From positions 221,573 to 285,572 of IMG/VR virus record IMGVR_UViG_3300021520_000002: a stretch of 64,000 bases of DNA; one strand, written 5' to 3'. A program made the position numbers and the translations under genes. The notes beneath the pieces are model-generated. The model saw only the letters and a list, made by a program, of their open reading frames with translations, had not been told where the DNA came from and did no database searches. Positions 549 through 58,150 of the stretch are shown here, piece by piece (position 1 is the stretch's first letter; every line of letters starts with the position of its first letter).

Positions 549-580
549 ATCGGCAAGATCTATTGCTAAATCTTGCCGAT
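549..580. repeat. dispersed palindromic hairpin, copy 1
   Basis: ATCGGCAAGATCT-ATTGCT-AAATCTTGCCGAT just after the RNAP beta stop codon. Confidence 0.95.
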
Positions 581-4503: not shown

Positions 4504-4535
4504 ATCGGCAAGATCTATTTCTAGATCCTGCCGAT
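4504..4535. repeat. dispersed palindromic hairpin, copy 2
   Basis: ATCGGCAAGATCT-ATTTCT-AGATCCTGCCGAT. Confidence 0.92.
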
Positions 4536-10481: not shown

Positions 10482-10556
10482 TGGTGCCCAAGGTGAGAAT
10501 TGAACTCACGACCTAGTGTTTTAGAGGCACTCGCTCTACAACTGAGCTACTTAGGC
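10482..10556 (-). tRNA. tRNA with CUA anticodon (amber suppressor type)
   Basis: GCCTAAG TA GCTC AGTTGTA GAGC G AGTGC CT-CTA-AA ACACT AGGTC GTGAG TTCAATT CTCAC CTTGGGC A CCA; encoded CCA; C31-A39 mismatch and no D-loop GG. Confidence 0.88.
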
Positions 10557-15448: not shown

Positions 15449-15480
15449 ATCGGCAAGATCTATTGCTAAATCTTGCCGAT
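15449..15480. repeat. dispersed palindromic hairpin, copy 4
   Basis: identical to copy 1, just after the beta-prime C-terminal gene stop. Confidence 0.95.
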
Positions 15481-15487
15481 ATTTATT

Positions 15488-17476
15488 TTACACTTGACCT
15501 AGCCAAATCTTTTCATAAATTGTTAATATTGGACTATCTATTACTTCTTCCATATCAAGTTCTATTTTCTCAACTGAATTTTTATTTGGTTGATATAAAA
15601 GACCTAATAATGGACTTATATAACTTGCTAATTGTTTATCACCAAGTTTGAATGTTGGAGTTTGACTTTGATTATATCTCCAAAATACTTTATTATCATA
15701 ATCTACTAGGAACATATTTGCAAATAACATTTCAATAAATGAACTGTAAACTGTTCCTACACTTAACATTAAAGTCATAAAATCTTGATAATATTCTTTT
15801 GGTGTTTTTGTTAATTTACTTTGTTGTTTTAACACATTTTTAACTTGATTCATAACAGATATAACATCTTCATTTTTTACTACTTTAGAATCAGCTCTGA
15901 ATGAAAGTTGATTAGTTTTATAATCAATATTCATTAATCCAGGTATATCAGATAAAATTTTATCTGTTAGAATATCTGGAAATTCATTAGTGTCAAAAGT
16001 TAGAATTGTTTGCTCATTAATTCTTTCAACATTAATCAAATGATCTCTAAAAAATTCTAAAACTTCTTTATTTTTTGGTAAATTTGCACCACCTGATACA
16101 TGAAAAGTTCGAAGGATTAATTGTGTTATCCTTTCGACCACACTTTGACCTGCAGTGATACCAACATACTTTGTTGGAAATTCTCTTGCACCAAAACATT
16201 TTCTACAAATTTTAAAATTTGGTTCTTCACAAGTTATTAAAGAACGAATATAGATTTTATTATTTATAAATTTTATAGCTTCTGAAAGAGTTAAAACTTT
16301 CCATTCAAGTTCAGTACTTTGTGGATCTCTATAATATTTTCCAACTAAAGTTTGTGCATGTTTCTGTGAAGTTACAATAATATCTAAATAATTTTCAGTT
16401 CCACAATCATCTGATTCTAGTTCCATGACCGAAAGTCCCATAACTATTGTTCTTTCAAGATACCCAGAATCTGGCGTCCATTTAGCCTTGTCCTGGATAC
16501 TTTTTCTTGTTCCTGGAGCGACTATAAAAAATTCTTCTTCTGTTAAACCTTCTAAAAGAGAGGTTTTAATTGGAATTGGAGTAATATTATTTTCCGCGTC
16601 AGCGCTATATCCGATCGAGATACAAGATCTTGCCAATTGTAATTTAGAAAATCTTGAACCTGATTTAAATAACTTATATAAATTTGATTCTTTATCAAAA
16701 TGTTTTAAACATCTTTCAACAAGAGATTCATTTATATAATAACCTAACATTATATTATCATTAGGTATTTGTTTAAGCAATCTAGTTGTTTCATCATCTT
16801 TAAGATCAACCATTTCTAAAACATCTAAACTTGGTGAATGCTTTGTAACTGATATGAAGAAGAATAGTTTCTTTTCAAGATCAGTTAATCGATCATAATA
16901 TTTTTTATTATCTTTTTCATTTTCAAGAATTAAACGACTAATCTCATTAGAATAATCTTTTTTAACACTTTTATTAATTATTATATTATTAAAACCACAC
17001 CATTTATTGAATAAACACATTCCATATGGTACTAGTTTATTTTTAAATTTAACGGCAGAATATAATTGATCATTCCATAATTCTATAGTTTCTGGAAGAT
17101 CATTAAGATCATCTATTTCTAATATAATTTTGGTTTTATCAAATTCTGTTCTTGTTAATACAAATGCAGCATACAAAGCTTCATATCTCACTGTTGATAA
17201 AAAATTGGAATTTTGATCATAATGAATTGTATTCATCCAAAATGCTTTCTGTTCCAGTTCTTTTAATGCATCAATATCATGAACAATATATATCGCACAT
17301 GTGTCTCCATCAAAATCTGCATTTAAAGCTTCAAGCATAAGCGGACTGATTTGAATTGAATCATTATCTCCATCCTCAATCGCTTCGATTAAAACTCCAA
17401 CACAACTATGACGCCATAATGAAGGTTGTCTATTAATAAATGCTATCCTTTTTAATTTATTTAAAGATTTGTTCAA
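15488..17476 (-). CDS. phage RNA polymerase beta-prime-like subunit, catalytic/C-terminal part
   Basis: NRQPSLWR, NADFDGD, SGSR, bridge helix TPDSGYLER, ICRKCFG, TQLILRTFHVSG; TTG start after AGGAGG. Confidence 0.93.
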   Translation of the reverse strand: MNKSLNKLKRIAFINRQPSLWRHSCVGVLIEAIEDGDNDSIQISPLMLEALNADFDGDTCAIYIVHDIDALKELEQKAFWMNTIHYDQNSNFLSTVRYEALYAAFVLTRTEFDKTKIILEIDDLNDLPETIELWNDQLYSAVKFKNKLVPYGMCLFNKWCGFNNIIINKSVKKDYSNEISRLILENEKDNKKYYDRLTDLEKKLFFFISVTKHSPSLDVLEMVDLKDDETTRLLKQIPNDNIMLGYYINESLVERCLKHFDKESNLYKLFKSGSRFSKLQLARSCISIGYSADAENNITPIPIKTSLLEGLTEEEFFIVAPGTRKSIQDKAKWTPDSGYLERTIVMGLSVMELESDDCGTENYLDIIVTSQKHAQTLVGKYYRDPQSTELEWKVLTLSEAIKFINNKIYIRSLITCEEPNFKICRKCFGAREFPTKYVGITAGQSVVERITQLILRTFHVSGGANLPKNKEVLEFFRDHLINVERINEQTILTFDTNEFPDILTDKILSDIPGLMNIDYKTNQLSFRADSKVVKNEDVISVMNQVKNVLKQQSKLTKTPKEYYQDFMTLMLSVGTVYSSFIEMLFANMFLVDYDNKVFWRYNQSQTPTFKLGDKQLASYISPLLGLLYQPNKNSVEKIELDMEEVIDSPILTIYEKIWLGQV

Positions 17477-17499
17477 GCGGCCTCCTTGATTTTCTCCTT

Positions 17500-18631
17500 C
17501 TAAAATTCAATTGTGACTTTGATGTTTTTTGGAAATGGTTTTGGAAGTTTATCTTTTAATAAATAAACTGTTCCTATCCAAGGTCTTTCTCCATCATCCT
17601 CTTCCTTATATCTGACTGTACCTTTTGTTTCTTTTTCTATTTCAAAATCTAACTCTATTTTTTTATCATCAAAAGATTTACTCATTTTCCTTTTTCTCCT
17701 TCTTTGTTATTTTCCTAAGAATTTTTACAACTTCATCAATTATCTTACTCCATATTATTTGTATTAAAAGAAATAAGAGTAGAGCTTGTAAAAATCCCCC
17801 ATACCATATAATACTAAAATTTGATGGAAAATATAATTCACAAAAGATTCTCATAATTGATAATAATGATATTGATATTAAAAATATTAGTATATATCTC
17901 ATCTTTATCCCTTCTTTGTTAAAGTTATTTCAACATTACAACTATATTCCATATCATAATCATCAAAATTAATATTTAATGTTTCTGCTAATTTTTTACC
18001 TTTTTCAAGAATTGCTTCTTCTAAAGGTTCAACATCAAAAAATTCAACATCTACAACATCTTCAATAGCATAAGTTTCAATTATTATTTTATCCATTTCT
18101 TATTTCAGCTATCATTTCATTAAATTTAATTCTTGCCGATTTATATTCATTTACAATTTCATCATAATTTATATCATCAAAATTTCCGAAAGTTCTGTTT
18201 AATATACTTCTATATTCATTAATTACATTTGACATTTTATCAATATCATAATTAAGAGGAATTTCTTTTTCTACTTCTTCCATTCTTTTTTCAAATTCTT
18301 CATGTGATTTCATTTCTTACTCCTTAACAACTAACTCTATAATTGTGATTTCTACTTCATAATCTTTTCCATCAATATATGTTAAATCGTGATCATCTTT
18401 TGGAGTTGTACATATTTTTAGAAACTCTTCCATATATTCTTTAGCTTTATCTTCAGATGTGAATATGAATTTACTTTTAATAACTGTCTTCTGTTCAAAA
18501 CAAGCTAATTGTCCACGAATACTGAGTTGATATAATTTAAGATCTTTAATATTATAAGTTGTTGTTTCAGAATATTTAAATAAACTATCAGGTTTTATAT
18601 TTGTTTTCTTCTTACTCATCTTCTTCCTCAA
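17500..18631 (-). CDS. five small hypothetical ORFs (17500-17685, 17678-17902, 17905-18096, 18089-18313, 18317-18631) between the beta-prime halves
   Basis: tightly packed, overlapping, co-oriented ORFs. Confidence 0.6.
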
Positions 18632-19802
18632 TATTAATTTTTTTCATTCTAACTATTGTTGTTGCTAACAATTTTTCTTGTGGAACATCTTCAGCTGTGA
18701 AGTATTCAACAAATTCATCAAATAATTGTTTATTATCTTTATATTCTTGAGTAACAACAGTATGATATATTTGAAGATAAGTATATTCTGGATGTTTTTC
18801 TTGAATATAATTAGCAAAATAAGGTAACCACAATTTATATAAAATTTCTTTACTTACTTTAATTTTATATGGTGGTAAGCTTGGATTGATTGTAATTACA
18901 GATCTTGCCGAAAACTCAATAGTTTTACCAAGAACAGATGATCTTATAAGACCCCATTTTCCAGATATATTTTCAAATACTTTTTCATATACCTTATCAA
19001 CATAATATTGATATTTAGCGGTCATTCTATCATATTCCTGAATCATTTGTTCTACAATTTCATCATCTAATTGTTCTTTCATACTTTTGTTAATTCTTAA
19101 TAACCAATCTTCTTCTTTATCATCTTTAACACTTCTTGTTGAAGCATTAGATTTATTTAATTGAACTAAACTAATATAAGGTTTATTCACTTCTGTATAT
19201 CTAAAACTTTCAGGTTTATTTGGATCTCTTATTACCGGCCGAACTTCAGGAGGTAATACTTTTATTGTATCCATTATATAACCTTTATCAAATAATTCTT
19301 GAGCTACAGCAATATGCATATAGTCCGCTAAATATTTTAAACAAAGAATAAAACTATATATTCCTGTTATTCTTAATGGTATAATATACCATCCATTTAT
19401 TTTATTAATTGAATCAACAATTTTTAATTTAGTTGTGTCACCAGATAATGCAAGAAATCTTGATGTTGCAGCTGTTGCATCTGCTCTTCTTGGATTTAAT
19501 AAATGTTTATGTGTTCCAACTATTTTCTTAAAATACTTTGTTCTTTTTGTTGGTTTAATAACCGGAAAAATTAAATTTATTTTACCGAAAGTTGATAATC
19601 TTGATTCATTACTAATACACATTACTCCACATTTATCACAAATATTTCCTTGATCAAGAACTTTTACTGATAATTTACCACATTTACATGTAAAATCTTT
19701 TATTGGTCCAAATATACTTTCACTAAAAAGTCCATCTTCATCAAACTTATTCTGTTTGTTAAAGATCTTGGGACTTGTTACTTCGCCTCGGTACTGTCCC
19801 AA
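18612..19802 (-). CDS. phage RNA polymerase beta-prime-like subunit, N-terminal part
   Basis: DGLFSESIFGP, Zn-finger CKCG..CDKCGV, VLPPEVRP, GKWGLIRSSVLGKTIEFSARSVI. Confidence 0.92.
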   Translation of the reverse strand: MGQYRGEVTSPKIFNKQNKFDEDGLFSESIFGPIKDFTCKCGKLSVKVLDQGNICDKCGVMCISNESRLSTFGKINLIFPVIKPTKRTKYFKKIVGTHKHLLNPRRADATAATSRFLALSGDTTKLKIVDSINKINGWYIIPLRITGIYSFILCLKYLADYMHIAVAQELFDKGYIMDTIKVLPPEVRPVIRDPNKPESFRYTEVNKPYISLVQLNKSNASTRSVKDDKEEDWLLRINKSMKEQLDDEIVEQMIQEYDRMTAKYQYYVDKVYEKVFENISGKWGLIRSSVLGKTIEFSARSVITINPSLPPYKIKVSKEILYKLWLPYFANYIQEKHPEYTYLQIYHTVVTQEYKDNKQLFDEFVEYFTAEDVPQEKLLATTIVRMKKINIEEEDE

Positions 19803-27772: not shown

Positions 27773-27909
27773 GTATCCCCCTTTTTTATAGTTTTATAAA
27801 TATATTATTTCTATATTAAAATGAAGAAAAAACAAAAGGGTCAAGATTTCATGAGCGCGCCCCTTTGCGATACTTCAATCCATATAACCTCCTTGGCCAC
27901 TAGGCCATT

Positions 27910-28122
27910 TTACATAGCTCTTACACAGGTTCCAGCCATTCCACAAACGGAACAGCTTATACCAAGTGAACATCTCGTTTTCTTTTTCGGACGAGTCTTG
28001 TGCAGAACGTCGTTGAAATATTTTCGAGATTTATGTTCAGTTTCAGCCGCTTTGTGTATTTCTACACTTAAAAAAGCGTTCTGAAGCTTACGAGCCAAAG
28101 TTGAATCTTGTAAAATTTGCAT
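27910..28122 (-). CDS. hypothetical basic protein with C-terminal Cys cluster
   Basis: promoter 28156, SD AGGAGGAG, CSLGISCSVCGMAGTC. Confidence 0.65.
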   Translation of the reverse strand: MQILQDSTLARKLQNAFLSVEIHKAAETEHKSRKYFNDVLHKTRPKKKTRCSLGISCSVCGMAGTCVRAM

Positions 28123-28184
28123 GTTCTCCTCCTAGAGTTTTTTGTTACTTTATTATTTCTATATGAAATCTTTAAAAATAAAAA

Positions 28185-28328
28185 CAAACAAAATTTTCAT
28201 ATGATACGAATATCACATGAAAATCTTGCCGGTAGAACAATTTCTTAAACCAGCAAGTGGTTCAGAACAGGAACATCTACAGCCTACTGTAGCGTCCTTC
28301 AACTAAAGGTTACCCTTTAATCTATACT
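28185..28328 (-). ncRNA. structured small RNA, paralog A
   Basis: promoter 28335, five hairpins, terminator; covaries with paralog B. Confidence 0.7.
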
Positions 28329-28369
28329 TATTAATTTCTATATGAAAAGCTTGAATATCAAAAAAAGAA

Positions 28370-28516
28370 AATAAACAAAGAACTTATGTGATATAAATAT
28401 CACATAAATCCTTCGCCAGTCGGAGCAAAACTTTTTTCCCGTGAGGGAATTAGTTAGGAGCATCCAAAGCTTTCTTTGGCGTCCCTTAGATATACATTAC
28501 TGTATATCTTACATTA
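28370..28516 (-). ncRNA. structured small RNA, paralog B
   Basis: promoter 28523, five hairpins, terminator; covaries with paralog A. Confidence 0.7.
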
Positions 28517-28569
28517 ATATAATTTCTATATTAAAATCGCAAATATCAAAAAAAGAAAAAAGGAGAAAA

Positions 28570-34310: not shown

Positions 34311-34359
34311 AACATCCTCCTTTGATTTGATATCTATATTATTTCTATATGAAATCATA

Positions 34360-34428
34360 AAAAACAAAAAGTGGGATCGCTCCAACTTTTTGCTAGATAG
34401 GGCTGTTATAGCTCAACTATCTACCTAT
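34360..34428 (-). ncRNA. candidate ~65-nt small RNA
   Basis: promoter 34433, hairpin TAGATAG/CTATCTA, terminator CAAAAAGT/ACTTTTTG plus U-tract, no ORF. Confidence 0.55.
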
Positions 34429-34462
34429 ATTATTTCTATATGAAATCTTTAAAAATAAAAAT

Positions 34463-34491
34463 TAGCGGCAGGTTTGACTAACCCGCCGCTA
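34463..34491 (-). terminator. intrinsic terminator
   Basis: TAGCGGCGGG/CCTGCCGCTA followed by T-rich tract. Confidence 0.75.
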
Positions 34492-34495
34492 TCTA

Positions 34496-37374
34496 TTAAT
34501 CTAACGGTTTACCACAATTATTACATTTTGGACCTTCATATTTAATACTGTTATATACATTACAATTTGGACAAAGATCTATGTATAATTGATCAAGTGG
34601 TACAAATAGTGGATGTGCTGTTACCACTTCTTTGGCTCTTGCTAATGAACAATTATATCTATCTTTAATTATTTTTATTAACACGATTGGAGTGAGTGGT
34701 AAAAATGTTAAATCTTCTTCAGTGAAAATAATTTCTTTTTTATCATTTTCTTCCATATCTTTATAATATTTTTGTCTTTCTTCTTCTCGAATAATAGATG
34801 CACATTCTCTATCGGCAAGAATTATAACTCGACCTTTTTTTGTTGTTGTGTCTGATAGTTTCACAAGATCACGATGAGAATCGATAATAACTGCAATTCT
34901 ACTATACATCAGAAAATTTGGATCTTTAACATCATAGACAATTTTTCCTTTATCTGGTTCATCTTCAGGAAACACTCTATTTTCCCATTCGATAGATGAA
35001 CCTTCTAATGAGTTAGTTATTGTCCATTTTTCCATTAATCATCATCTCCTACTATTTCATTAATCATTGTTTTAATATGATCTTGCCAACTGGAAGGCAA
35101 AGAATTTCTATCTATTTCATTAGTACTATCACATGCTTCACAATTATAATACAGATAACTATTATGACCAAAATGATAATGATATTCTAAATCATTTTTT
35201 TCAAGTTCTAGAGTACTCTGACAATTTTTACATGTGACCACAACTGTATTTTTGTTATCGATTATCCTCACATGAACTCCCCAAACTCTTTTTCTGTGAA
35301 TTTGATACCGGCAGCTTCTGCCATGGTTTTCAGTAGAAAAGTTGAAATATCACAATCTTTTCCAGGACAATTCTTTTTGTGATCTTTAACTACTTTTAAT
35401 ATATTCTTTTTCCAGAGAACAACATTTTCTCTATTTGGATCTGTTCCATCGATTTCATCGAATATTTTTTTTGCTTCTTCAGTTAATTTTCCATCCATTT
35501 TTGCCATAATTAATCTTTCTTCAAATGTTGAATTTAATTTACTAATCACATCCATATCAATTTGATATGGATGATTTTCTAATTCTCTATTAACTTCTAA
35601 TCTTCTCCCATCAATATGAACTTGTCTTTCATTTTCAAGAATAGTTCTTTCATCTCTTAATTTATTGATTTCAACTTCAATAGCTTTTATTTTATTATTA
35701 AATTTTATAATTTCTATTTCTTTGTAAACTTTTTGTGTAGTATCAGTTTTTACATTTTGAAATTCACGTGATAATGAATCATATCTCAATCTTAATTTCT
35801 GTCTGATTAATTGTATCAGATCAGATAGTTCACTTTTCAGATACTTTTTTGTCATTTTATTCTCCTATCTCATTATATTTTTCGATGGCAGCATCGAGAT
35901 TTTCATTATTGAACAAATATGTTTTTTGTTTAATTAGATCTTGAACTGTATAATATACACGATGATTAATATCAAGTACAAGATTTAATTTTTTGTGAAC
36001 CATATATAGATCAATTTCTGTTGCTATATTAATAACAATAGGGTCTTTTAATATTTTATTTACATCTTCTTTTGTGATTTTCATGTTTGTTCCATAAGAG
36101 TTTTCGCAATATCAAAATGTCCCATTAATAATTCTTCAGCAATAAATTTTGCTTGTTCAATTTCTGCTAAAGATTCATCATCATCTTTTTCTATGAAGAT
36201 GCGTGCAGCTGTAGTTAATCTTCTTAAAACATCTTTAAATAATTTTTCTTTTTCAGTCATTGTCTTTCTCCTTTTATGCTGTTGTTATATAATAGATTTC
36301 TATCATAGAATACTTACATGTTTCACATCTATCACAAAATAAGTCCTCTATCGGTTCTGTTCCATAGTAACATTCAAGATCTATCCAATACATAGTTTCT
36401 CCTCTTCTGTATTTTTATAAAATTCTTCCCATTTCTTACTTTCACCAGGTTGACAATTTTTGAAATGTTGAATTGATTTTTCTTTATCGGCAAAAGCTCC
36501 ACAATTATCACATACGAACATTTCTGATTCAGTAATATATGTAATTCCTATTAACATACTATAAGAAAGTGAAGTCGATCTGGATTATCATCACATGGTA
36601 CCGGCAAATGATTTTTAAAGATCATTCTCTTTTCGTCTACTTCACGAGCTACAAAAGTCCATCCAGCTTCAGTTCCAGATGGATTTAATCTATTACAGAC
36701 TTCAAGAATTTCCTCATCAGTTACATCTTTAACAGCACACACTTGCATCATTGTTAATCCATAAACGTATTTAGTAATTTCAACTCTACCCATCTGTCTT
36801 CTCCTCTTTTTTTCTAATTTTTGTAACTAAATCTTTTTGACAATCTTCCCAAAGTCCTTTAGCTCTAAGCCAAACAATTATCTGATCGAGAAGTCGTTCT
36901 TTCAGATCCATTTCAAGGATTATGTCCATTTCTTCTTTATTTGGCATCTTTCTTCTCCTTTTTATTTCTGGATTTTTTAATAACTTTATCAATAATTTCT
37001 ATAACTTCTGGATCTTTTTTAATAACTTCATCATCTGAAACATTTGCTCTATTTAAAACTGAATCTGGTGGTTTATTAAACATTATATTAGATTGGGCTT
37101 GTTGATATGGATCTTTTGGTAGATTTTTAAAACCATTCATTTTCATTTCTGATTTTTCTTTTTGATTACCAATAATAGCTTCACACCTACTTTCTAAAAT
37201 TTCTCTTAGTTCTTGAAAAGATTTTGCCGATAAACTATTACCAGTATTTACACCACCCAAACCATATACCATTCTGCTTACTGCTTTTTCAATAGTAATA
37301 ACTTTATCTGTGAAATGAATTTCTACAACATGATCTAAATTCAATATTTTGTCATTAATCATTATTAAGTTCAT
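34496..37374 (-). CDS. operon of small hypothetical ORFs (34496-35035, 35035-35271, 35268-35855, 35857-36084, 36551-36793, 36786-36947, 36937-37374 and smaller ones)
   Basis: co-oriented overlapping ORFs with AGGAG SDs; several CxxC pairs. Confidence 0.65.
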
Positions 37375-38132: not shown

Positions 38133-38164
38133 ATCGGCAAGATCTATTGCTAAATCTTGCCGAT
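38133..38164. repeat. dispersed palindromic hairpin, copy 5
   Basis: identical to copy 1. Confidence 0.95.
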
Positions 38165-38373: not shown

Positions 38374-41300
38374 TCAAACTTTAGTATTAACTTTAAAACC
38401 TTTGATTTTCATCTTTCTACATTTTTCAAATACACCATTTAAATTATTATTTTTATTTTCTCTAATAATTTCAATAACATCACTATCAGGTAATAAATAT
38501 TGTAATGCTTCAATTGAAGCTACAACTAAATCTTTATCAGTTTCTTCAATTAATATTTCTTTCCAGAATTGAACAGCTCTTTCAATTCTATGATCAATAG
38601 GTTTAAATTTTCTACCTTTTAGCGGCATATGATTTGGATTTTCTTCTAATGAAAGCATAGGTAAATCATGAACATTTATTTTACCAGATGGACTTTTTTC
38701 AAACAATGAATGTACAAAATCACCAAAAGCATCTATAGGACTATATTCTTTTGATCTACTATCTCCTGGTGAAGGAATTATAACTGGTTCTATTTCATAA
38801 TCACTGATGCTATTTATAAAACTTCTTAACTTATATGTATCACATTCATCTTTCTTTGGACATATTTCACATTTTTCTATATCCATTTTATCCCTCCGTT
38901 AATTCATAAAATATTGAATGACAATTTGGACAACTGAATAGTTGTTTATTATCATATACTACATTCATACTTCTATAATCTAATTTACCGTGAGAGTATT
39001 GACCTCTACTTACTAATTCTATTAGTGGTTCTCCTTTCTCTTTACATACTGGACACTGAAATTTTTCTCTGTCCATTATTCCTCCTCTAATTCATCATGT
39101 GACGACTAAATAACATATCGTCAATTTTAATATTTTTAATTTTTCCATCTGACTTAAAAGTATAGTGTCTCTGATACTTTAACAGATCATTTTGAATGTA
39201 TTTTCCTTGTTCAGAAAGTGACATATTTTCAAATTTTCTTCTTTCCAGATCCATTCCTGTTTTGATTAAATCTTTAAAGTCCTCTTTTATAGGATTATAA
39301 CCAATTACAGTAACATATCTTTTGAATATTTTTTCAAGTTCTTCATCAGATTTTGCCGAATCAAATTGTCCAAGAATAATATAGAAGAAACTATTTAAAA
39401 AATTAAGATGGGATTTTCTCATTTTACTACAATCCAATCCACCTTCTTCTTCTAGTTTTATAAGTTGTTTAAGTCTTTTTTGATTCATTTTTTCTCCATT
39501 AATTTAAAAGCAACATAAACCCAACCAATAATGAAAACAATTATTCCAACAGGTATTAAAATATCATAAATTAATATTTTAGATGTTATAGCTACTATCT
39601 GTGTAATTATAATGATCGTTGTTATTATTGGAAGTATAAGCATTATTCTTCCTATCCATCTTTTCATTTTTTCTCCTTTAAGAAGCATATGCTAAATGTA
39701 ACCATGAATCTGATAAATATGGATTTGAAGTTCCTGATGTTCTTATAGCACTATATTTAGATGTATTTGCAACAGCAGCTGTATATACAACTGTATATGT
39801 ATATGAATAATATGTTTGCATTGAAGATCTATATCGATCTCCAGTGACTTCTCCATTTTCAATCACTCTATAATGAATATGACTACAATGAGGACATTTA
39901 ATTTCATGATTTCCATTTAATCCAAAATCAAGCTTAGCTATAAAATCTTTACCACAACCATGACAATATAGATCAGTTGGAACTATCATTATTTCTCCTT
40001 TTTATCGGCAAGATCTTTAAATTAGATCTTGCCGATATTGATTTATTCTCCTTGAACCATTACTACTTTAAGTAATCTTTCTAAAATCATACTTATATGT
40101 GAACCAATCGATAAATCATCTTCTGCTATTTCTTCAACTCGTAAACCATCACAATATACTACAAATTTTAGCTTTCTCCATTCAAATATAACTGATTCTT
40201 TATTAATAGCTATTATTGTTACAGATTCTGGATATGGTATACTTTTAATAACTAAAGTAATAATTTTTTCTGGTGTTCTGATCATTTATTTTTCTCCTTA
40301 CTGATGATTTTCCATAAATTCATGAATTGTATCTCTTGCTAAACTTAAAGCATCTGGATGTGCATCTCCAGAACTAATAACTAAATTTAATAAATCATAA
40401 ATTGGTTCTAATAATCCATTAATATCATTTAACAAATCAATTTTTTCCTCTGAACATTTTCCTTTTTGTTTTACTGGTACTACACCATCTGGTTTCATAT
40501 TATTTCTCCTTTTTACATTCTGTTATTATTGATAATTCTAAATTAAGTAGATCAATTTCAGTTCTAAGAGCGTATACTCTTATATCTGTTGATAATAAAT
40601 CATTATTTTTAATTGTTGTGATAAATTTTGACATTTTTTCTAATTCTGCTAATGTTTTCTCCATATGTTCCAGTGTCATTCTTCTTTCTCCTGTGGAATA
40701 TTTGGAAGTCTAAACCACTCTTTTCTTTCATCATTAGCAGACCACATTGTTCCGTCATCACATAACGCATAAACAATAATTCCTGGATAACGTTCTTTTG
40801 AATTTGGTATATGTACACAAAACATTTGTATTGGCTTTCTCATATTTTCTCCTTTTTATTAGTAAGATCTATTGCTAAATCTTGCCGATATTATTAATAA
40901 GTTCTAATAAACTCTAACATCTTATTTCCTGATTTAAAGCAAATACATGTTTTACTACCCATTGGTATTCTTCTATTAATTAAATACACAGGACATTTAT
41001 TATTACATGAACCATGTTCACTACAACAAATTTCAAACAATTCTTCAGCTAATTCATCATCTGTTATTTCTTCTTTCTTTATTACTTTCATTAAAAGATG
41101 TACCATTTTATTTCTCCTTATTCATAGAATTTTATTTTCTTCCAGTTCTTTTTTCTTTTTCCTATAAATGGTGGATCATATTGTTTTACAGCTTTATATT
41201 CAATTTCAATAACTTCTTGTTTAAGTTTAGTAGTATCTCCATCATGTTCAATATCTTTCTCCCTAATTCTTCTAACTATAACTTCTGGAGAAATTTCTAA

Positions 41301-41438: not shown

Positions 41439-41847
41439 TTGAACCTTCTTTTTATTTTTATATTATAGTAAATTAAATATATTGCAGAACAAACCATTGC
41501 ACCTACATAAATATACCAATATTCTTTAAGAAATTCAATTCTCCAGATAGTGTATTCTATTAACCAGTCTATCATATGTTTCTCCTTTTTAAAATAGTTT
41601 TTCTAAGTTGAGTAATTTTATTATTATCATACTATATATTGCTCCTATAATAAATGCTAAAAAACCTATCCAAAAACCATATTCAAAACAATTAGTACTT
41701 AATATTGAAATTGGAAATAATATCATTATAAGTCCTATGTGATTTCTCATTTGTTTCTCCTTTTGTTTTTAAAATTAAAATAAAGCTGGAAAATTCCAAC
41801 TTTATTATTCTATATTATTTCTATATGAAATCAAGAAAAAATAAAAA

Positions 41848-41955
41848 CAAAAAGAGTCTGGATATGTTAACGCTCATATCCAGATTTCGTTAGTAAGTGT
41901 AATTGATTGTGCCTGATTCAATCAATTACAGTCGCTTAACGCTTCTTTCTATTAT
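41848..41955 (-). ncRNA. candidate ~105-nt small RNA
   Basis: promoter 41961, 12-bp TGTAATTGATTG/CAATCAATTACA stem, terminator TCTGGATATG/CATATCCAGA. Confidence 0.6.
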
Positions 41956-41984
41956 TATAATTTCTATATGAAATGTTTAAAAAC

Positions 41985-42050
41985 AAAAACAGAAATCCGG
42001 GTTGCCCCGAATTCCTGTTTCCATCAAATCAAATCACTGTTCTATATATT
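41985..42050 (-). ncRNA. candidate ~65-nt small RNA
   Basis: promoter 42058, terminator AAACAGGAATTCGGG-GCAA-CCCGGATTTCTGTTT. Confidence 0.55.
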
Positions 42051-42093
42051 ATTATAATTTCTATATGAAAAGCTTGAAAACAAAAAAAAGTTG

Positions 42094-42125
42094 ATCGGCA
42101 AGATCTATTGCTAAATCTTGCCGAT
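42094..42125. repeat. dispersed palindromic hairpin, copy 8
   Basis: identical to copy 1. Confidence 0.95.
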
Positions 42126-42131
42126 AATTAT

Positions 42132-42614
42132 TTATTTATTAAATGTGGTTGGGAGTTCATTAATTTTATCGCTAATAAATGCTCCATCTTTAAAAAACCA
42201 TAATATTAATGTTGTTCTATGAATTTTAGAATTTTCTAAATCATACAAATATTTTGCTTCTTTTTTAGACAGATCAGATAGATAATTAGATAAGTTTGTT
42301 GATTGTTTCATATTATCTAAACTACCAGCAATTGTCACCTCAGATGATTTTGATAATTTATATCGAGCATTTTTAATTATACTAATATTCTCTTTTAAAC
42401 TTACAATTTCAATATGTGTTGATCTCAACTTTGGATAATCATTAATTCCTGAAATTATACATATTGTAAAAATTGCTAATGAAATAATTAATACAAAACT
42501 TGATACCATATACCAAGCAGTATCATCATGATAATTTTTCTTGTTTATTTTTCTATAAACAGATATACTAACCATTACTATAATTGCTAAAATACTTAAA
42601 TAAAGATAGAACAT
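42132..42614 (-). CDS. hypothetical membrane protein
   Basis: two N-terminal TM helices; promoter 42658; SD AGGAGGT. Confidence 0.7.
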   Translation of the reverse strand: MFYLYLSILAIIVMVSISVYRKINKKNYHDDTAWYMVSSFVLIISLAIFTICIISGINDYPKLRSTHIEIVSLKENISIIKNARYKLSKSSEVTIAGSLDNMKQSTNLSNYLSDLSKKEAKYLYDLENSKIHRTTLILWFFKDGAFISDKINELPTTFNK

Positions 42615-42975
42615 ATTTTTTAACTACCTCCTTTTGAATTTTTTATTACCTATATAATTTCTATATATAATCTTTGAAAAAATAAATTTATAATACTATA
42701 TAACTCTACAACTACTCACATATGATCACGGTTTCCCTATGGGGTATTTTGGAAAACCCTTTATATTTTTTCAAGGATAGAAAATACAGAACTATAATCT
42801 TAGATAGTATGATATTAAATTTTTTAATGATTCTATTGTAGCTTCTCTTTTAGAAGCATAGGCTTAATTTTCTGGTTGATTTTCCAGGAATAGTTTTAGT
42901 AGTAGTTTCTGGAGTTCAATTTCCAGAGAATGTTTGTTTGGAATAATATAATAAATATATAGGAGGAAAATTTTT

Positions 42976-45900
42976 ATGGCTGATCAAGTAACTCCGACTC
43001 AAGAACGTTATATTGATCCATATATGCAACGGATTTTCGATTTCGATACCGTTGATGCTAAAGTGTATTTATCTCGTGCAACAAACATGTTGCTTAAGTC
43101 CATTGGTAACAATCTAGTTCTCGATGGATTCGATATAGAAAATCCAACGATTACCTCAAACACAATCATATCAGTTGATGTTAATCCTGGACTAGCTATA
43201 CAAGATTATGTACTTTGTGAAAATTTAGCAGGAACTGGTGTTATACCAAAAGTAACATTGAGTATGGATGTTGCTGGTTTAACTGATACAACTGTTGGAT
43301 TAGCTCATATAGGGGTTTTTCTTGATTATCAATTTTTACATACTGTGAACAGGAATGATTTTGTATTAAGAATGTATCATGTACCAGCATCTGGATTTGG
43401 ATTAACTCCAGCTGGTTTCAGTGCACCAAGAAGTGCTACACTTATTGGTATTATATGTTATACAAAAGATCCTGTAACAGGATATGTAACATATGCATGG
43501 GTTCTTCCAGAATTAGTTGGTGGAGTACCTGATTATGAAAACTGGCCATCTCTATTAGCTGAGACTGTAACTTTTTATCTGAAAGGATGGAAAGAACATT
43601 ATCCTCATATCAATTTTCATGATCTGGTTAAATTTATAGGTGGATATGAAGGTTGGGTAAGTGGTCCAGATTCAGCAATTGATGAAAGTATTGCTGTTTT
43701 TGATGGTACAAGTGGTAAACTAATTAAGATGATTGAACGTAATGTAAGAGTTATTCCAGATTGTTCACTTGGAATCAATGTAGAAGTTCCTTGTGATAAT
43801 GTTCTTGGAACTGATGGTAATATATATCGGTGTAGAGTTTCACACACATCTGTCGATGAAGTTTTACCAACTAGTGAAGTTACAAATCTTGGTCAAGGGT
43901 ATCGTTGTAAATTAGCTCATACTGCAGCAGCTATTAATGAGCCAGGTGTTGGTGCTAATTGGGCAACTTATTGGACAGTAAAAATAAGTGTTGCTGGTCC
44001 AGCTTGGGTTTCTGGAACAGATTATATAATTACTGGAAATCGGCCGATAACTGGAAATTTTATTGATCCTGAAACATTACATGAAGAGTGGACAAAATAC
44101 TGGGATAGAAACTATGATAAATTAACAGCTGATGTTTGGACCGCTGGAAGACCTTATATAACAAATATGGATTCTATTATGGAGATGACTATCGGCAACT
44201 CAGAAGTTCATCTTAAAAAATATTGTGCAAATATAGAACCATATAGTGGTTTCGATACAAATTTTTGGAATGCAGAACGTCAATATCGTCCAGCTATGAT
44301 AACTGGTGATTTAGTAACTATGGGTTTTGATTATTCTTATGGTTATAATTGGATACATTGTGGACCTCCAAATACTATTATTGATAATATCATGGGGTGG
44401 GAACCATATAATGCTCTTATGATTTGGAATCATAAAACACAAGAGGCTTGGGATACATTTCCTGTTCAATATGGTATTGTATGTGAAAATCAAAATTATG
44501 CTACAAATTCATGGGTATTTCCAATAGCAATATCTGGTTGGCAAACTGAAGCTGGTCAGTCTGAAATTGAAGGACAAGATGGAGTTTGTTATCGTTGTAT
44601 TAAAGATCATACTTCAGATCCAACAAATAGGCCATTTAGTGGTGCTACACATAATGGGCCTGGTACAGTTTCAAATTTAGCTAATAGTCCTAATGTTGTT
44701 GGAGTTGGTACTCAATTTCTTTCAGATTTTTATATGAATCATACTATAGTAATTGACGGTGAATATCATTTTATTGCACATGTAACTGATGATACAAATC
44801 TTATCACAGGCATTCCATCTGAACTTGGTGATACATGGTCGACAACACCAATATCATTAGCCCACACCAATGTAGCATATGAAGTGTGTGATTGGAATGA
44901 ATTTTGGGCAAAAGGTGGTGGAGCTGGAATGAATCCTTGGGCTAATGGTAGATTTTATCAGTCCAGAGGAACTTCTAATAGTTTTATAAATATTGCTTTT
45001 CATGGTATATCCATGAGTTATGGTCAATTTGGTATGGGTCAGTTAAGACCCTTTTATGGTGAATGTAGATATATGGGTGGTTCTTATGCAAACACTCATT
45101 ATGGAGATGATACAGGCAACAAACCTCTTGGTTGGGGTTCTATGAGAGTTGCTATGTGTTTTATGGCTGAAAGTAATTTATATGAAGATGGTTGGGAAGG
45201 CAAACCAGGAACTATTCCTGTAACTGAAGGGACAGTTTATGGATTTTATGCTAAAGCATTTGATGGTGGAGCATTTAAATATTCTTTCTGGGGACAAAAT
45301 CAACTTTATATTGGTAAGACTGATACTTCTTATACTGGTCAACTAGCAGCAATATATGCAAAATATGAAAAATCTTGTCGATTAAATGAAACAATAATAG
45401 GTGTTTTTGCAGTAGCAGGAGATATTCCACAAGAGTTAGTAACACCAGCTAATGATTCAAATTTTTCTTGGAATCCAACAGATTGGGTAAATGATACTCT
45501 TGTAGAATGTGTATGTCATCCTGGTACTGAAGAAGTTCCACCACTTCCATGGCAACAAAGTTATCTTCGCTGTGTATCTTCTGCAGCTGGACAATATGGT
45601 CATTTACCAGCGGCAAATTTTCCAGTAGAAGGAATAACATTAGTTACTAATGGTGGATTAACATATAGATGTATAAGACCTTACACATCTACTTTAGATA
45701 CTGAACCTGGAGTTGGAGCAAGTTGGGCATCATATTGGGAGTTATTTCCTGATTGGGATATTGGTATAGATTATGTTTTTGGAGATTTTATAGTTAAAGG
45801 TTCTGTTAATGTATATAAATGTATATTAGCTCACACTTCAGCCGCTATTACGGAACCTGGAGTTGGTGCAAGTTGGTCTGTGTGTTGGAAATATGCTGGA

Positions 45901-49687: not shown

Positions 49688-49719
49688 ATCGGCAAGATCT
49701 ATTTCTAGATCTTGCCGAT
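49688..49719. repeat. dispersed palindromic hairpin, copy 9
   Basis: ATCGGCAAGATCT-ATTTCT-AGATCTTGCCGAT after fibre stop. Confidence 0.95.
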
Positions 49720-58116: not shown

Positions 58117-58150
58117 ATCGGCAAGATCTTGTAATATAGATCTTGCCGAT
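58117..58150. repeat. dispersed palindromic hairpin, copy 10
   Basis: ATCGGCAAGATCT-TGTAATAT-AGATCTTGCCGAT after fibre stop. Confidence 0.95.

What the first reader, a model, noticed from the sequence alone, without database searches (positions are those of the whole stretch)
41780..42130. Stack of three promoters producing tiny terminated RNAs
Seen (- strand): palindrome, promoter (42058), ~65-nt RNA ending in a GCAA-loop terminator, promoter (41961), ~105-nt RNA with a 12-bp stem and terminator (AGCGTTAA occurs both near its 5-prime end and in the terminator loop), promoter (41818), hairpin and then genes. Each U-tract directly abuts the next promoter, as at 27800-28530 and 34340-34490. Inference: a modular promoter-cargo-terminator cassette array whose cargo can be an sRNA or a short ORF. 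The ATGGAAAC in the 65-nt unit resembles a crRNA 5-prime handle, but this is weak.
Basis: partly seen in the sequence, partly recalled or inferred. Interest (0 to 1): 0.72.

Follow-up and report, generated by a model that had tools for sequence, protein, structure and literature searches.

The report
Jumbo-phage early promoter stack, tiny RNAs
Three tandem copies of an uncultured giant phage's own early promoter, separated by strong terminators, are predicted to make two very short non-coding RNAs before the third copy drives a gene cluster; the layout is real and recurs in this phage lineage, but no transcript has been seen and the RNAs' role is unknown.

Summary
On the minus strand of window 41780-42130 lie three copies of a conserved promoter separated by strong hairpin-plus-U-tract terminators. 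The first two units have no ORF. Their predicted RNAs are about 65-73 nt and 105-109 nt. The third unit has a 5' hairpin and then small ORFan genes.

The promoter is a roughly 35-nt two-part element: a T-rich half, then invariant TTTCATATAGAAAT, then 6 nt, then a purine. It has 59 copies in this 285.6-kb, 29% GC freshwater jumbo phage and none in a shuffled genome. A distant 315-kb relative has 72 copies. Both phages have the look of phiKZ/AR9-type phages, and this one carries two multisubunit RNA polymerase sets. The motif geometry matches AR9 early promoters, which the virion polymerase reads.

The same promoter drives ORFs, tRNAs and at least 12 ORF-less terminated units. One tandem pair of those units has 13 compensatory base pairs. 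The relative has similar stacks.

The cassette interpretation is partly supported. The nearest known analogue is the PeSL promoter-terminator cassette of T4-like phages, but this is not a member of that class. No transcripts, homologs, Rfam matches or targets were found for the two tiny RNAs. The crRNA-handle idea found no support in a single exact-match test. The tiny units could also be empty cassettes.

The parts
42640..42686 (-). P0: a weaker copy of the same promoter (core 42670-42657, 2 mismatches, PWM 24.9). It drives the 160-aa ORFan gene.
42132..42614 (-). 160-aa ORFan with a hydrophobic N-terminal half. It is the first gene of the minus-strand block after the divergent strand switch.
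   Evidence: Only itself among 5.8 billion proteins. No Pfam or PHROG family above cut-off.
42094..42125 (.). T0 palindrome with 14-bp arms, followed on the minus strand by a T-run (42089-42073). It belongs to a dispersed family of about 26 loci (ATCGGCAAGATCTA-loop-TAGATCTTGCCGAT).
   Evidence: -20 kcal/mol, z -7.0
42051..42087 (-). P1: full two-part promoter. T-rich upstream half, invariant core 42070-42057, then 6 nt. Predicted TSS at 42050.
   Evidence: (PWM 36.4). TSS inferred from the motif-(6N)-purine rule and the AR9/phiKZ analogy.
41978..42050 (-). Unit 1: predicted ORF-less RNA of about 62-73 nt. It has a 25-nt unpaired AU-rich 5' part, a 20-bp terminator stem (42025-42006 / 42001-41982) with a GCAA loop (42005-42002), and a U-tract.
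   Evidence: -25.9 kcal/mol, z -5.4. No SD-preceded ORF. Unique in the genome.
41954..41990 (-). P2: full promoter (core 41973-41960). Predicted TSS at 41953. It is 89% identical to P1 over 47 nt, and its T-rich half doubles as the U-tract of unit 1's terminator.
   Evidence: (PWM 34.7)
41845..41953 (-). Unit 2: predicted ORF-less RNA of about 100-109 nt. It has a perfect 12-bp hairpin (41930-41919 / 41909-41898, 9-nt loop), a 10-bp terminator (41884-41875 / 41866-41857) and a U-tract. AGCGTTAA lies at 41943-41936 and 41874-41867.
   Evidence: -35.0 kcal/mol, z -5.9. Unique in the genome.
41811..41847 (-). P3: full promoter (core 41830-41817). Predicted TSS at 41810.
   Evidence: (PWM 34.3)
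41779..41806 (-). 12-bp hairpin at +5 to +32 of the P3 transcript, read as a 5'-terminal stem-loop of the mRNA leader. Similar hairpins starting at about -2 to +9 follow three other copies of this promoter (genome 168032, 177754, 190844).
   Evidence: -13 kcal/mol, z -4.2
41589..41762 (-). SD AAGGAG (41762-41757) and the 53-aa hydrophobic ORF (ATG 41750). This is the first gene of the small-ORFan operon served by P3; ORFs of 46, 106, 70, 55 and more aa follow.

Best explanation
The window comes from an uncultured freshwater jumbo phage: 285.6 kb, 29% GC, with two multisubunit RNA polymerase sets. The three 'promoters' are copies of the phage's own early-type promoter. This is a roughly 35-nt element: a T-rich half, invariant TTTCATATAGAAAT, 6 nt, then a purine start.

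By analogy with AR9 and phiKZ, I infer that the virion-packaged phage RNA polymerase reads it at the onset of infection.

Each copy starts an independent transcription unit:
- Units 1 and 2 end at strong intrinsic terminators. The U-tracts of those terminators double as the T-rich upstream half of the next promoter.
- Units 1 and 2 contain no ORF, so they should yield abundant RNAs of about 65-73 nt and 100-109 nt.
- Unit 3 carries a stabilising 5' hairpin and expresses a run of small ORFan genes.

The stack is one instance of a lineage-wide modular system of promoter-cargo-terminator cassettes. The cargo can be a small ORF, a tRNA or a non-coding RNA. The repeated promoter and terminator ends probably also serve as recombination sites for cassette gain, loss and replacement.

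I commit to units 1 and 2 being early-expressed small non-coding RNAs that act in trans on host or phage components. Unit 1 has the minimal 'unpaired 5' segment + terminator hairpin + U-tail' build of base-pairing sRNAs.

**Shown:** the motif statistics, the hairpins, the absence of ORFs, the two RNA polymerase sets, and the analogous units in a relative.
**Inferred:** which polymerase reads the promoter, the start sites, termination, and any function of the RNAs.
For: **The promoter is real**
- 26 hits against 5.45 expected in the window.
- 59 PWM sites against 0 in a shuffled genome; 52 lie on the minus strand.
- Most sites sit 15-60 nt upstream of an SD plus start codon.
- The same two-part element has 72 copies in the 315-kb relative G001. 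There, only the promoter boxes match at DNA level and a shared protein is about 38% identical.

**Phage polymerase context**
- Split beta/beta'-like proteins are present.
- There are two beta-like and two beta'-like catalytic-domain loci.
- The published rule is that such phages have a phage-specific AT-rich motif near -10 of early operons, read by the virion polymerase (PMC7598289).
- The AR9 early motif is a 13-mer, then 6N, then G as TSS; phiKZ also starts 6 nt downstream of its element (PMC5312081). Here 41 of 48 sites have a purine at motif +6N.
- The motif is largely absent from the plus-strand arms that carry the tail-fibre genes (7 of 59 sites lie on the plus strand). It precedes small ORFans, tRNAs and one RNA polymerase subunit gene.

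**Terminators**
- 6 found against 0.4 expected, with z from -4.2 to -7.0.
- In AR9, predicted intrinsic terminators stop phage transcription.

**ORF-less units recur**
- At least 12 in G000 and about 10 in G001, including a three-promoter stack.
- A tandem paralogous pair has 13 of 45 compensatory pairs and none broken.
- Two tRNAs lie directly downstream of one copy.

**Cassette exchange**
- A wastewater relative keeps T0-P1-unit 1-P2 with no listed difference inside the unit 1 body, then diverges right after P2.
- The flanking genes are strict ORFans.
Against: - No transcript evidence exists. RNA libraries hold no contig of this region from this genome.
- Units 1 and 2 have no homolog in IMG/VR or JGI metagenome contigs, and none in the relative G001. 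Strain-level copies are 100% identical. So neither conservation nor covariation can be assessed for them.
- No Rfam family comes near its threshold.
- No complementarity to phage translation-initiation regions exceeds that of shuffled controls. No antisense match in the genome exceeds 13 nt.
- Apart from its terminator, unit 1 has only about 25 nt of AU-rich cargo.
- The architecture 'promoter + 5' hairpin + terminator' is what would remain if the ORF were deleted from an ordinary cassette.
- Assigning the promoter to the virion polymerase rests on analogy only.
- The wastewater-relative evidence is one contig of 251 nt and one of 151 nt, at depth about 2-13.
Confidence: 0.5

Rival explanations
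1. Empty cassettes. Units 1 and 2 are by-products of recombination between repeated promoter/terminator ends, in the manner of PeSLs. The promoter, leader hairpin and terminator are what is left after the cargo ORF was lost. The short RNAs may be made but have no function of their own.
For: - The 'promoter + 5' hairpin + terminator' build equals a P3-type unit minus its ORF. P3-type 5' hairpins are seen at four promoters.
- P1 and P2 are 89% identical over 47 nt and closer to each other than to other copies, which suggests a recent duplication or exchange.
- The region is a hypervariable ORFan zone.
- A relative has different cargo after P2.
- PeSL-mediated deletion and replacement is documented in T4-likes (PMC2839356).
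- No homologs or targets were found for units 1 and 2.
Against: - ORF-less units are numerous in both distant phages, and compact phage genomes tend to purge useless DNA.
- Unit 2's perfect 12-bp hairpin is highly non-random and starts at +24, not at the 5' end as the leader hairpins do.
- The unit 1 body shows no listed difference in the wastewater relative while its flanks do (weak).
- Other ORF-less units of the same promoter are clearly structured RNAs under selection.
Confidence: 0.25
2. Cis-regulatory stack. The three promoters and two terminators work together to set the level or timing of the downstream ORFan operon. The terminators insulate it from upstream transcription. Under an antitermination or read-through condition, all three promoters add up.
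For: - The units are co-oriented with, and immediately upstream of, the P3 operon.
- PeSL stem-loops are proposed to block accumulation of transcription from distal promoters.
- Tandem promoter pairs without intervening terminators also occur in this genome: 33, 42 and 54 nt apart at genome 244450/244417, 215022/214980 and 159115/159061.
Against: - Both terminators are very strong: 20-bp and 10-bp stems with long U-tracts.
- A promoter followed 25 nt later by such a terminator contributes nothing downstream unless antitermination exists, and there is no evidence for that.
- Insulation alone does not need P1 or P2.
Confidence: 0.12
3. The motif is not a phage-polymerase promoter. It is a host sigma-70-type promoter carrying a phage activator or repressor site in its spacer, or a middle-class promoter read by the non-virion polymerase.
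For: - A weak TTxxAx element at -9 to -4 and an AATATA/TATAAT-like hexamer at +14 to +19 of the alignment can be read as -35 and -10 boxes with a 17-nt spacer.
- Timing was not measured.
Against: - The invariant 14-mer would then lie in the spacer, which is not conserved in sigma-70 promoters.
- The generic sigma-70 scan shows no enrichment.
- The geometry '13-14-nt AT-rich element, 6N, purine' matches virion-polymerase promoters.
- The motif is conserved between two phages that both look like phiKZ/AR9-type phages, far beyond their general DNA similarity.
Confidence: 0.12
4. Origin-associated primer transcripts. The stack of short transcription units marks or activates a replication origin, as with the tandem promoters at the T7 primary origin or the T4 origin transcripts (own knowledge).
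For: - The genome-wide cumulative GC-skew minimum lies at 264-265 kb (window about 42.5-43.4 kb), within about 1 kb of the stack.
- It coincides with the divergent strand switch at 42615-42975.
Against: - Skew here follows gene orientation, so the minimum is confounded with transcription direction.
- Similar stacks occur at many other places: window 28 kb and 34 kb, and genome 153, 178 and 190 kb.
- Strong terminators release the RNA rather than leaving a primer hybrid.
- No AT-rich unwinding element or iterons were noted.
Confidence: 0.04
5. Unit 1 is an RNA anti-CRISPR or solitary-repeat mimic whose ...GATGGAAAC segment imitates a crRNA 5' handle.
For: That phages are known to encode repeat-like RNAs is my own knowledge, not tested here.
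Against: - The 19-mer ending in GATGGAAAC has 7 single hits in unrelated taxa and no arrays among 185,579 species genomes, which is about chance level.
- GGAAAC is part of the terminator stem.
- No repeat-like hairpin precedes it.
Confidence: 0.02

Closest known systems
Early (virion-RNA-polymerase) promoters of jumbo phages with two multisubunit RNA polymerases (AR9/PBS1, phiKZ, phiR1-37)
   Same: - A phage-specific, highly conserved AT-rich element of 10-14 nt upstream of early operons.
- The start lies 6 nt downstream on a purine.
- There are dozens of copies per genome.
- Intrinsic terminators sit at operon ends.
- Two beta/beta'-like polymerase sets are encoded.

   Different: - The sequence is unrelated to the AR9 (AAATATATATTAT) or phiKZ motifs.
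- There is an additional conserved T-rich upstream half, which overlaps terminator U-tracts.
- The polymerase beta-like subunit is only about 23% identical to AR9's.
- Timing and polymerase dependence are untested.
- Many copies drive ORF-less units. By contrast, only one 75-nt sRNA was predicted in phiKZ, and it was not confirmed.
PeSL (promoter-early stem-loop) cassettes of T4-like phages
   Same: - Repeated composite promoter plus terminator stem-loop ends flank small ORFans in hypervariable early regions.
- An AT-rich tract lies upstream of the promoter.
- They are proposed to insulate units and to mediate insertion, deletion and replacement of cassettes.
- Here P1 and P2 share 47 nt at 89%, and a relative diverges right after P2.
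   Different: - PeSL promoters are sigma-70-like and read by host RNA polymerase. This motif is not sigma-70-like.
- Here the stem-loops are not one conserved module. One palindrome family exists, but only 3 of about 26 copies precede a promoter.
- The cargo includes non-coding RNAs and tRNAs.
- Mini-circles and recombination end-points are untested.
Small terminated phage RNAs with their own promoter (lambda oop, T4 RNAs C and D, predicted sRNAs of PA5oct and phiKZ); own knowledge
   Same: Short ORF-less units (50-150 nt) with a dedicated promoter and a Rho-independent terminator in lytic or temperate phage genomes.
   Different: - No antisense partner or target was found here.
- No homology to any Rfam family.
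- Expression is unverified.
Tandem phage-polymerase promoters at the T7 primary replication origin (own knowledge)
   Same: Closely spaced tandem promoters for a phage polymerase, near a point of strand or skew divergence.
   Different: - Each unit here is closed by a strong terminator.
- Similar stacks are scattered over the genome.
- No origin features were identified.

Membership tests
Jumbo-phage early promoter read by virion multisubunit RNAP (phiKZ/AR9 type) | The phage encodes two sets of multisubunit RNAP beta/beta'-like subunits. | tested here: met
   PHROG RNAP beta hits on three window proteins. Pfam Rpb2_6 matches at 2 loci and Rpb1_2 at 2 loci above cut-off.
Jumbo-phage early promoter read by virion multisubunit RNAP (phiKZ/AR9 type) | A phage-specific, highly conserved AT-rich motif of 10 nt or more is over-represented upstream of operons of non-structural genes. 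| tested here: met
   59 sites against 0 in a shuffled genome. 52 are on the minus-strand arm, upstream of small ORFans, tRNAs and an RNAP subunit gene. Only 7 lie on the plus strand, whose arms carry the tail-fibre genes. Conserved in G001.
Jumbo-phage early promoter read by virion multisubunit RNAP (phiKZ/AR9 type) | The transcription start lies about 6 nt downstream of the element, on a purine. | tested here: inconclusive
   Purine at motif +6N in 41 of 48 sites (G 33% against 15% background). No 5'-end data.
Jumbo-phage early promoter read by virion multisubunit RNAP (phiKZ/AR9 type) | Transcripts appear first in infection, independent of host RNAP and of new protein synthesis. | not testable with these tools
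   The phage is uncultured, and no RNA run holds this region.
Intrinsic (Rho-independent) terminator | A stable G+C-containing hairpin is immediately followed by a U-tract. | tested here: met
   Terminator scan finds 6 against 0.4 expected. Unit 1 has a 20-bp stem and unit 2 a 10-bp stem, both followed by runs like TTTTTGTTTTT.
Intrinsic (Rho-independent) terminator | RNA 3' ends are observed at the U-tract. | not testable with these tools
   No transcript data.
PeSL cassettes of T4-like phages | A conserved composite element joins an early promoter and an adjacent stem-loop between ORFan genes of hyperplastic regions. | tested here: inconclusive
   The promoter is strongly conserved, and at least 21 of 59 copies have a terminator hairpin within 45 nt upstream. 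The neighbours are ORFans. However, the stem-loops differ in sequence, and the one conserved palindrome family is mostly unlinked to promoters (3 of about 26).
PeSL cassettes of T4-like phages | The promoter is sigma-70-like (-35/-10) and read by host RNAP. | tested here: not met
   The invariant 14-mer does not fit -10 or -35. With the start at +6N, an invariant G falls where sigma-70 requires A-11. There is no sigma-70 enrichment.
PeSL cassettes of T4-like phages | Indels and replacements between related genomes have their end-points in the elements; mini-circles form. | tested here: inconclusive
   One low-depth contig of a relative diverges right after P2. No other intermediate relatives are available. 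Mini-circles are not testable.
Trans-acting base-pairing sRNA | A stand-alone unit with its own promoter, no ORF, and a terminator hairpin with a U-tail. | tested here: met
   (sequence level only)
Trans-acting base-pairing sRNA | A conserved unpaired seed has significant complementarity to target mRNAs. | tested here: not met
   Against 423 phage translation-initiation regions, the best duplexes equal those of shuffled queries. No antisense match exceeds 13 nt. The host is unknown, so host targets are not testable.
RNA anti-CRISPR / solitary CRISPR-repeat mimic | Sequence similarity to a CRISPR repeat that occurs in arrays in prokaryotic genomes. | tested here: not met
   Exact 19-mer scan gives 7 single scattered hits and no arrays. 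This is an exact-match test only.
Any described RNA family (Rfam 15) | The covariance-model score reaches the family's gathering threshold. | tested here: not met
   The best hit is frnS at 29 bits against a threshold of 60. All others are weaker. At gathering thresholds, only tRNAs were found in the window and in the seven other stretches scanned.

The most novel reading that the evidence does not exclude
In this uncultured jumbo-phage lineage, a sizeable share of the early promoters does not express proteins. About 12 of 59 promoters in this phage and about 10 of 72 in the 315-kb relative fall in this group. They would instead yield a battery of small, mostly family-less RNAs made by the injected virion polymerase in the first minutes of infection. 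Units 1 and 2 would be two such RNAs. They would act on the host, for example as base-pairing regulators or as protein or nuclease decoys against defence, before any phage protein exists. The cassettes would be exchanged between phages through their promoter and terminator ends.
Probability: 0.15. Interest if true: 0.75.

Novelty: new variant of a known kind. Interest (0 to 1): 0.42.

Why it matters
- It would define the early promoter and terminator grammar of an uncultured freshwater jumbo-phage lineage whose RNA polymerase is only about 23% identical to that of AR9.
- The PeSL-like cassette logic of T4-like phages would also exist with a phage-polymerase promoter and with RNA cargo.
- It would give a concrete catalogue of candidate early phage sRNAs. 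This class is almost unexplored in lytic jumbo phages: phiKZ had one unconfirmed prediction.
- If instead the tiny units are empty cassettes, they record how hypervariable early regions turn over.

Tried and rejected
1. **Transcript evidence.** The hits were a relative's DNA-like contigs, or the repeated T0 palindrome in foreign flanks.
2. **Homologs of the cargo.** Exact-pattern scans of IMG/VR and JGI metagenome contigs returned nothing but the source contig.
3. **Syntenic relatives through flanking proteins.** The 160-aa and 106-aa proteins have no relatives in IMG/VR or among 5.8 billion proteins. Strain copies are 100% identical.
4. **Megablast of 6 kb against cultured phages.** No match.
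5. **Rfam.** Nothing near threshold.
6. **Paralogs and antisense targets in the genome.** None.
7. **Duplex energies against 423 phage translation-initiation regions.** Equal to shuffled controls. A first, slower version timed out.
8. **CRISPR-repeat mimic.** Not supported in an exact-match scan.
9. **Hidden ORFs through stop-codon recoding.** Rejected. TAG read as sense gives the smallest ORF gain, and TAG ends 12-16% of ORFs. Units 1 and 2 are closed by TAA and TGA in all frames.
10. **Covariance model of the paralogous 150-nt RNAs.** It found no further member in G000 or G001. Unit 2 scores only 17 bits, E about 0.3.
11. **T0 palindrome as a fixed half of a composite promoter-terminator element.** Rejected. 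Only 3 of about 26 copies precede a promoter, and the family is absent from G001.
12. **Generic sigma-70 scan.** Uninformative, at 22 against 22.6 expected.
Full report
**What is there**

Read on the minus strand, window 42686-41748 contains the following, in order:
- A weaker promoter copy (core 42670-42657) and a 160-aa ORFan gene (42614-42132).
- A 14-bp-arm palindrome, T0 (42125-42094), with a T-run.
- Promoter P1 (core 42070-42057).
- 25 nt of unpaired AU-rich sequence, then a 20-bp hairpin with a GCAA loop and a U-tract.
- Promoter P2 (core 41973-41960).
- A perfect 12-bp hairpin, then a 10-bp terminator hairpin with a U-tract.
- Promoter P3 (core 41830-41817).
- A 12-bp hairpin at +5 to +32, then AAGGAG and ATG at 41750, opening a run of small ORFs (53, 46, 106, 70, 55 aa and more).

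**Is it more than chance?**

Yes.
- The 14-mer TTTCATATAGAAAT with up to two mismatches occurs 26 times in the window, against 5.45 +/- 2.38 in shuffles. Nearly all hits are on the minus strand.
- A weight matrix built from the 48 genome copies with at most one mismatch finds 59 sites in the 285,572-bp genome at score 14 or above. It finds none in a shuffled genome.
- Terminator-like sites are 15-fold enriched locally.
- Each predicted RNA folds far better than dinucleotide shuffles, with z from -4.2 to -7.0.
- Perfect hairpins of 12 bp or more occupy 29 loci in the genome, against 0-3 in shuffles.
- The repeat finder independently reports four 47-nt promoter copies here.
- By contrast, the generic sigma-70 scan shows no enrichment: 22 sites against 22.6 expected.

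**What the promoter is**

It has a T-rich half at -17 to -4 (consensus aTTTtnATtTTya), four variable bases, the invariant 14-mer, then AATA-like bases. A purine sits at position +6 after the 14-mer in 41 of 48 copies. The T-rich half is present even where no terminator precedes it. It is also conserved in the relative. So the 'U-tract abutting the next promoter' is one sequence doing two jobs.

The genome is a single 285.6-kb contig with 29.4% GC. Eight freshwater or lake metagenomes hold it at 0.98-0.99 of sampled words. It encodes split RNA polymerase beta/beta'-like proteins. Two beta-like and two beta'-like catalytic-domain loci are present. This is the two-polymerase arrangement of phiKZ/AR9-type jumbo phages. 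The nearest cultured relatives, AR9 and PBS1, are only about 23% identical in the beta-like subunit.

The literature states that each such phage has its own highly conserved AT-rich motif near -10 of early operons, read by the virion polymerase (PMC7598289). The AR9 early promoter is a 13-mer, then 6N, then G as the start. phiKZ and phiR1-37 also start 6 nt downstream of their elements, and predicted terminators are strong in vivo (PMC5312081). The geometry here is the same.

The motif precedes small ORFans, tRNAs and one RNA polymerase subunit gene. It is largely absent from the plus-strand arms that carry the tail-fibre genes: only 7 of 59 sites lie on the plus strand.

I therefore read it as the early promoter of this phage. 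The predicted starts are 42050, 41953 and 41810. That the virion polymerase reads it is an inference by analogy.

**Evidence from a relative**

IMG/VR contig IMGVR_UViG_3300044712_000810 (G001; 314,837 bp, terminal repeats, 33% GC) carries 61 copies of the 14-mer at one mismatch or fewer. A reversed control pattern gives 1. By the weight matrix it carries 72 sites, including the T-rich half. Yet only the promoter boxes match at DNA level, and a shared tail-fibre N-terminus is about 38% identical. The promoter is therefore under much stronger constraint than anything around it.

**The stack in its genome-wide context**

Most of the 59 promoters sit 15-60 nt upstream of an SD and start codon. 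About a dozen do not:
- Units 1 and 2 here.
- A 68-nt unit at window 34445.
- Two 150-nt units at window 28535 and 28347.
- Units at genome 153040, 152946, 177898, 190034, 191101, 198711 and 248452.
- The copy at genome 152806 is followed directly by two tRNAs.

The two 150-nt units are tandem paralogs. 13 of their 45 predicted pairs are changed on both sides and none is broken. So at least some ORF-less units of this promoter are RNA genes under structural selection.

Four promoters, including P3, are followed by a hairpin starting at about -2 to +9 and then a gene. I read these as 5'-terminal stabilising stem-loops. That reading is inference from general knowledge of mRNA decay.

G001 shows the same architecture:
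- ORF-less units of 70-120 nt at 37220, 41166, 175300 and 265030. The last is followed 110 nt later by another promoter and a gene.
- A three-promoter stack at 301352/301577/301750, making three GC-rich, highly structured RNAs of 150-200 nt.

None of these is a known Rfam family; only tRNAs pass threshold.

**Units 1 and 2 themselves**

- Both lack any SD-preceded ORF and are closed in all frames.
- Their cargo is unique in the genome. No antisense match exceeds 13 nt.
- Complementarity to 423 phage translation-initiation regions does not exceed that of shuffled controls.
- No copy exists in IMG/VR or JGI metagenome contigs other than the source contig Ga0194053_10000002.
- Strain-level copies are identical.
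- The flanking proteins are strict ORFans.
- AGCGTTAA occurs only twice in the genome, both times in unit 2. A repeated 8-mer in 110 nt is only weakly significant.

The only comparative glimpse comes from two wastewater runs. Their short, low-depth contigs cover T0-P1-unit 1-P2 at about 93-97% identity. The listed differences lie in the first bases of the transcript, the T-runs and the T0 loop, and none lies in the unit 1 body. One contig then diverges completely right after P2. This is what cassette-wise replacement predicts, but it is thin evidence.

No RNA library holds this region from this genome. Transcription is therefore unverified.

**How it most likely works**

Each promoter copy is an independent early start site, and the strong terminators close units 1 and 2. 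The result would be two abundant ORF-less RNAs of about 65-73 nt and 100-109 nt, followed by an mRNA with a 5' stem-loop.

I favour small trans-acting RNAs made at the onset of infection. Unit 1 has the 'unpaired 5' segment + terminator + U-tail' build. Unit 2 displays a long perfect hairpin with a 9-nt loop.

The main rival is that they are empty cassettes left by recombination between the repeated ends. The build equals a P3-type unit without its ORF, and P1 and P2 are 89% identical over 47 nt.

Weaker rivals:
- **A cis-acting insulator or attenuator stack.**
- **An origin-linked role.** The cumulative GC-skew minimum of the genome lies within about 1 kb, at the divergent strand switch. However, skew follows gene orientation here, and similar stacks are scattered over the genome.
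- **A CRISPR-repeat mimic.** A scan of 185,579 species genomes gave 7 single scattered hits and no arrays.

**Comparison with known systems**

It works like two known things at once:
- The virion-polymerase early promoters of phiKZ/AR9-type jumbo phages. Membership features were met where testable; timing and polymerase dependence could not be tested.
- The PeSL promoter-terminator cassettes of T4-like phages (PMC2839356, PMC4122927).

It is not a PeSL. The promoter is not sigma-70-like. The stem-loops are not a single conserved module, because the one conserved palindrome family is mostly unlinked to promoters and is absent from G001. The cargo includes RNAs.

**Verdict**

Novelty: a new variant of known kinds. 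Interest is moderate at 0.42. It would rise substantially if early, abundant, discrete RNAs were shown.

Noticed in passing
window 551-578, 4506-4533, 13878, 15451-15478, 38135-38162, 40006-40034, 42096-42123, 49690-49717, 58119-58148, and about 17 more loci in the genome: A dispersed palindromic repeat family: ATCGGCAAGA(T/C)CTA, a loop of 3-8 nt, then TAGATCTTGCCGAT, with 14-bp arms and about 26 intergenic loci on both arms of the genome. Many copies are not followed by a T-run; some abut an SD directly. Only 3 precede the early promoter. The family is absent from relative G001 but present in other contigs of the same lakes' metatranscriptomes. Strain assemblies break inside it. It could be REP-like, a protein-binding site or a polymerase-specific terminator; this is unexplained.
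   Followed up: partly
window 28180-28329 and 28367-28516 (minus strand): Two tandem paralogous RNAs of about 150 nt, each with its own early promoter and terminator and four hairpins. 13 of 45 pairs are compensatory and none is broken. No Rfam match. A covariance model finds no further member in G000 or G001.
   Followed up: yes
L072:12470-12712 (genome 198470-198711, minus strand); also genome 190034 and 191101 (L072): ORF-less early-promoter units of 170-240 nt. One is strikingly GC-rich for a 29% GC genome. Predicted folds are -80 kcal/mol (z -6.2) for the unit at 198711 and -59 kcal/mol (z -7.8) for the unit at 190034. No Rfam family at gathering threshold.
   Followed up: partly
L069:1352-1970 (G001 301352-301970, plus strand): The relative has its own stack of three early promoters. 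They drive three GC-rich, highly structured, terminated RNAs of 150-200 nt with no Rfam match.
   Followed up: partly
L070:14614-14760 (genome 152613-152760, minus strand): An early promoter (genome 152806) is followed directly by tRNA-Asn(GTT) and a second tRNA-like gene. This shows the promoter class also serves RNA genes.
   Followed up: partly
window 10482-10556 (minus strand); G001 290747-290821: Both phages carry a tRNA with anticodon CTA (amber-suppressor type). There is no sign of genome-wide TAG recoding: TAG ends 12-16% of SD-preceded ORFs, and reading it as sense gives the smallest ORF gain.
   Followed up: partly
window 15488-19802 (minus strand): The RNA polymerase beta'-like homology is spread over two ORFs (15488-17476 and 18612-19802). 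About 1.1 kb separates them and holds small ORFs on both strands. One in-frame TGA is reported inside the Pfam match. This could be naturally split subunits or an inserted element.
   Followed up: no
window about 42500-43400 (genome 264-265 kb): The cumulative GC-skew minimum of the whole genome lies here, at the divergent switch between the minus-strand block and the plus-strand tail-fibre genes. The maximum is near 105 kb.
   Followed up: partly
window 42869-42890 and 42906-42929 (plus strand): Two similar hairpins (TTTCTGG...CCAG) lie in the leader just upstream of the 2233-aa tail-fibre-like gene. They may be late-promoter or leader elements.
   Followed up: no
genome 152947-153020 (L070, minus strand): The 74-nt ORF-less unit after promoter 153040 carries CUCCUCC in its unpaired 5' part. 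This is an anti-Shine-Dalgarno-like motif and might pair with ribosome-binding sites.
   Followed up: no
window 44165-44445: The only exact metatranscriptome contig on the 5-kb stretch lies inside the 2233-aa tail-fibre-like gene (281 nt, run X15). It may reflect late-gene expression or DNA carry-over.
   Followed up: no
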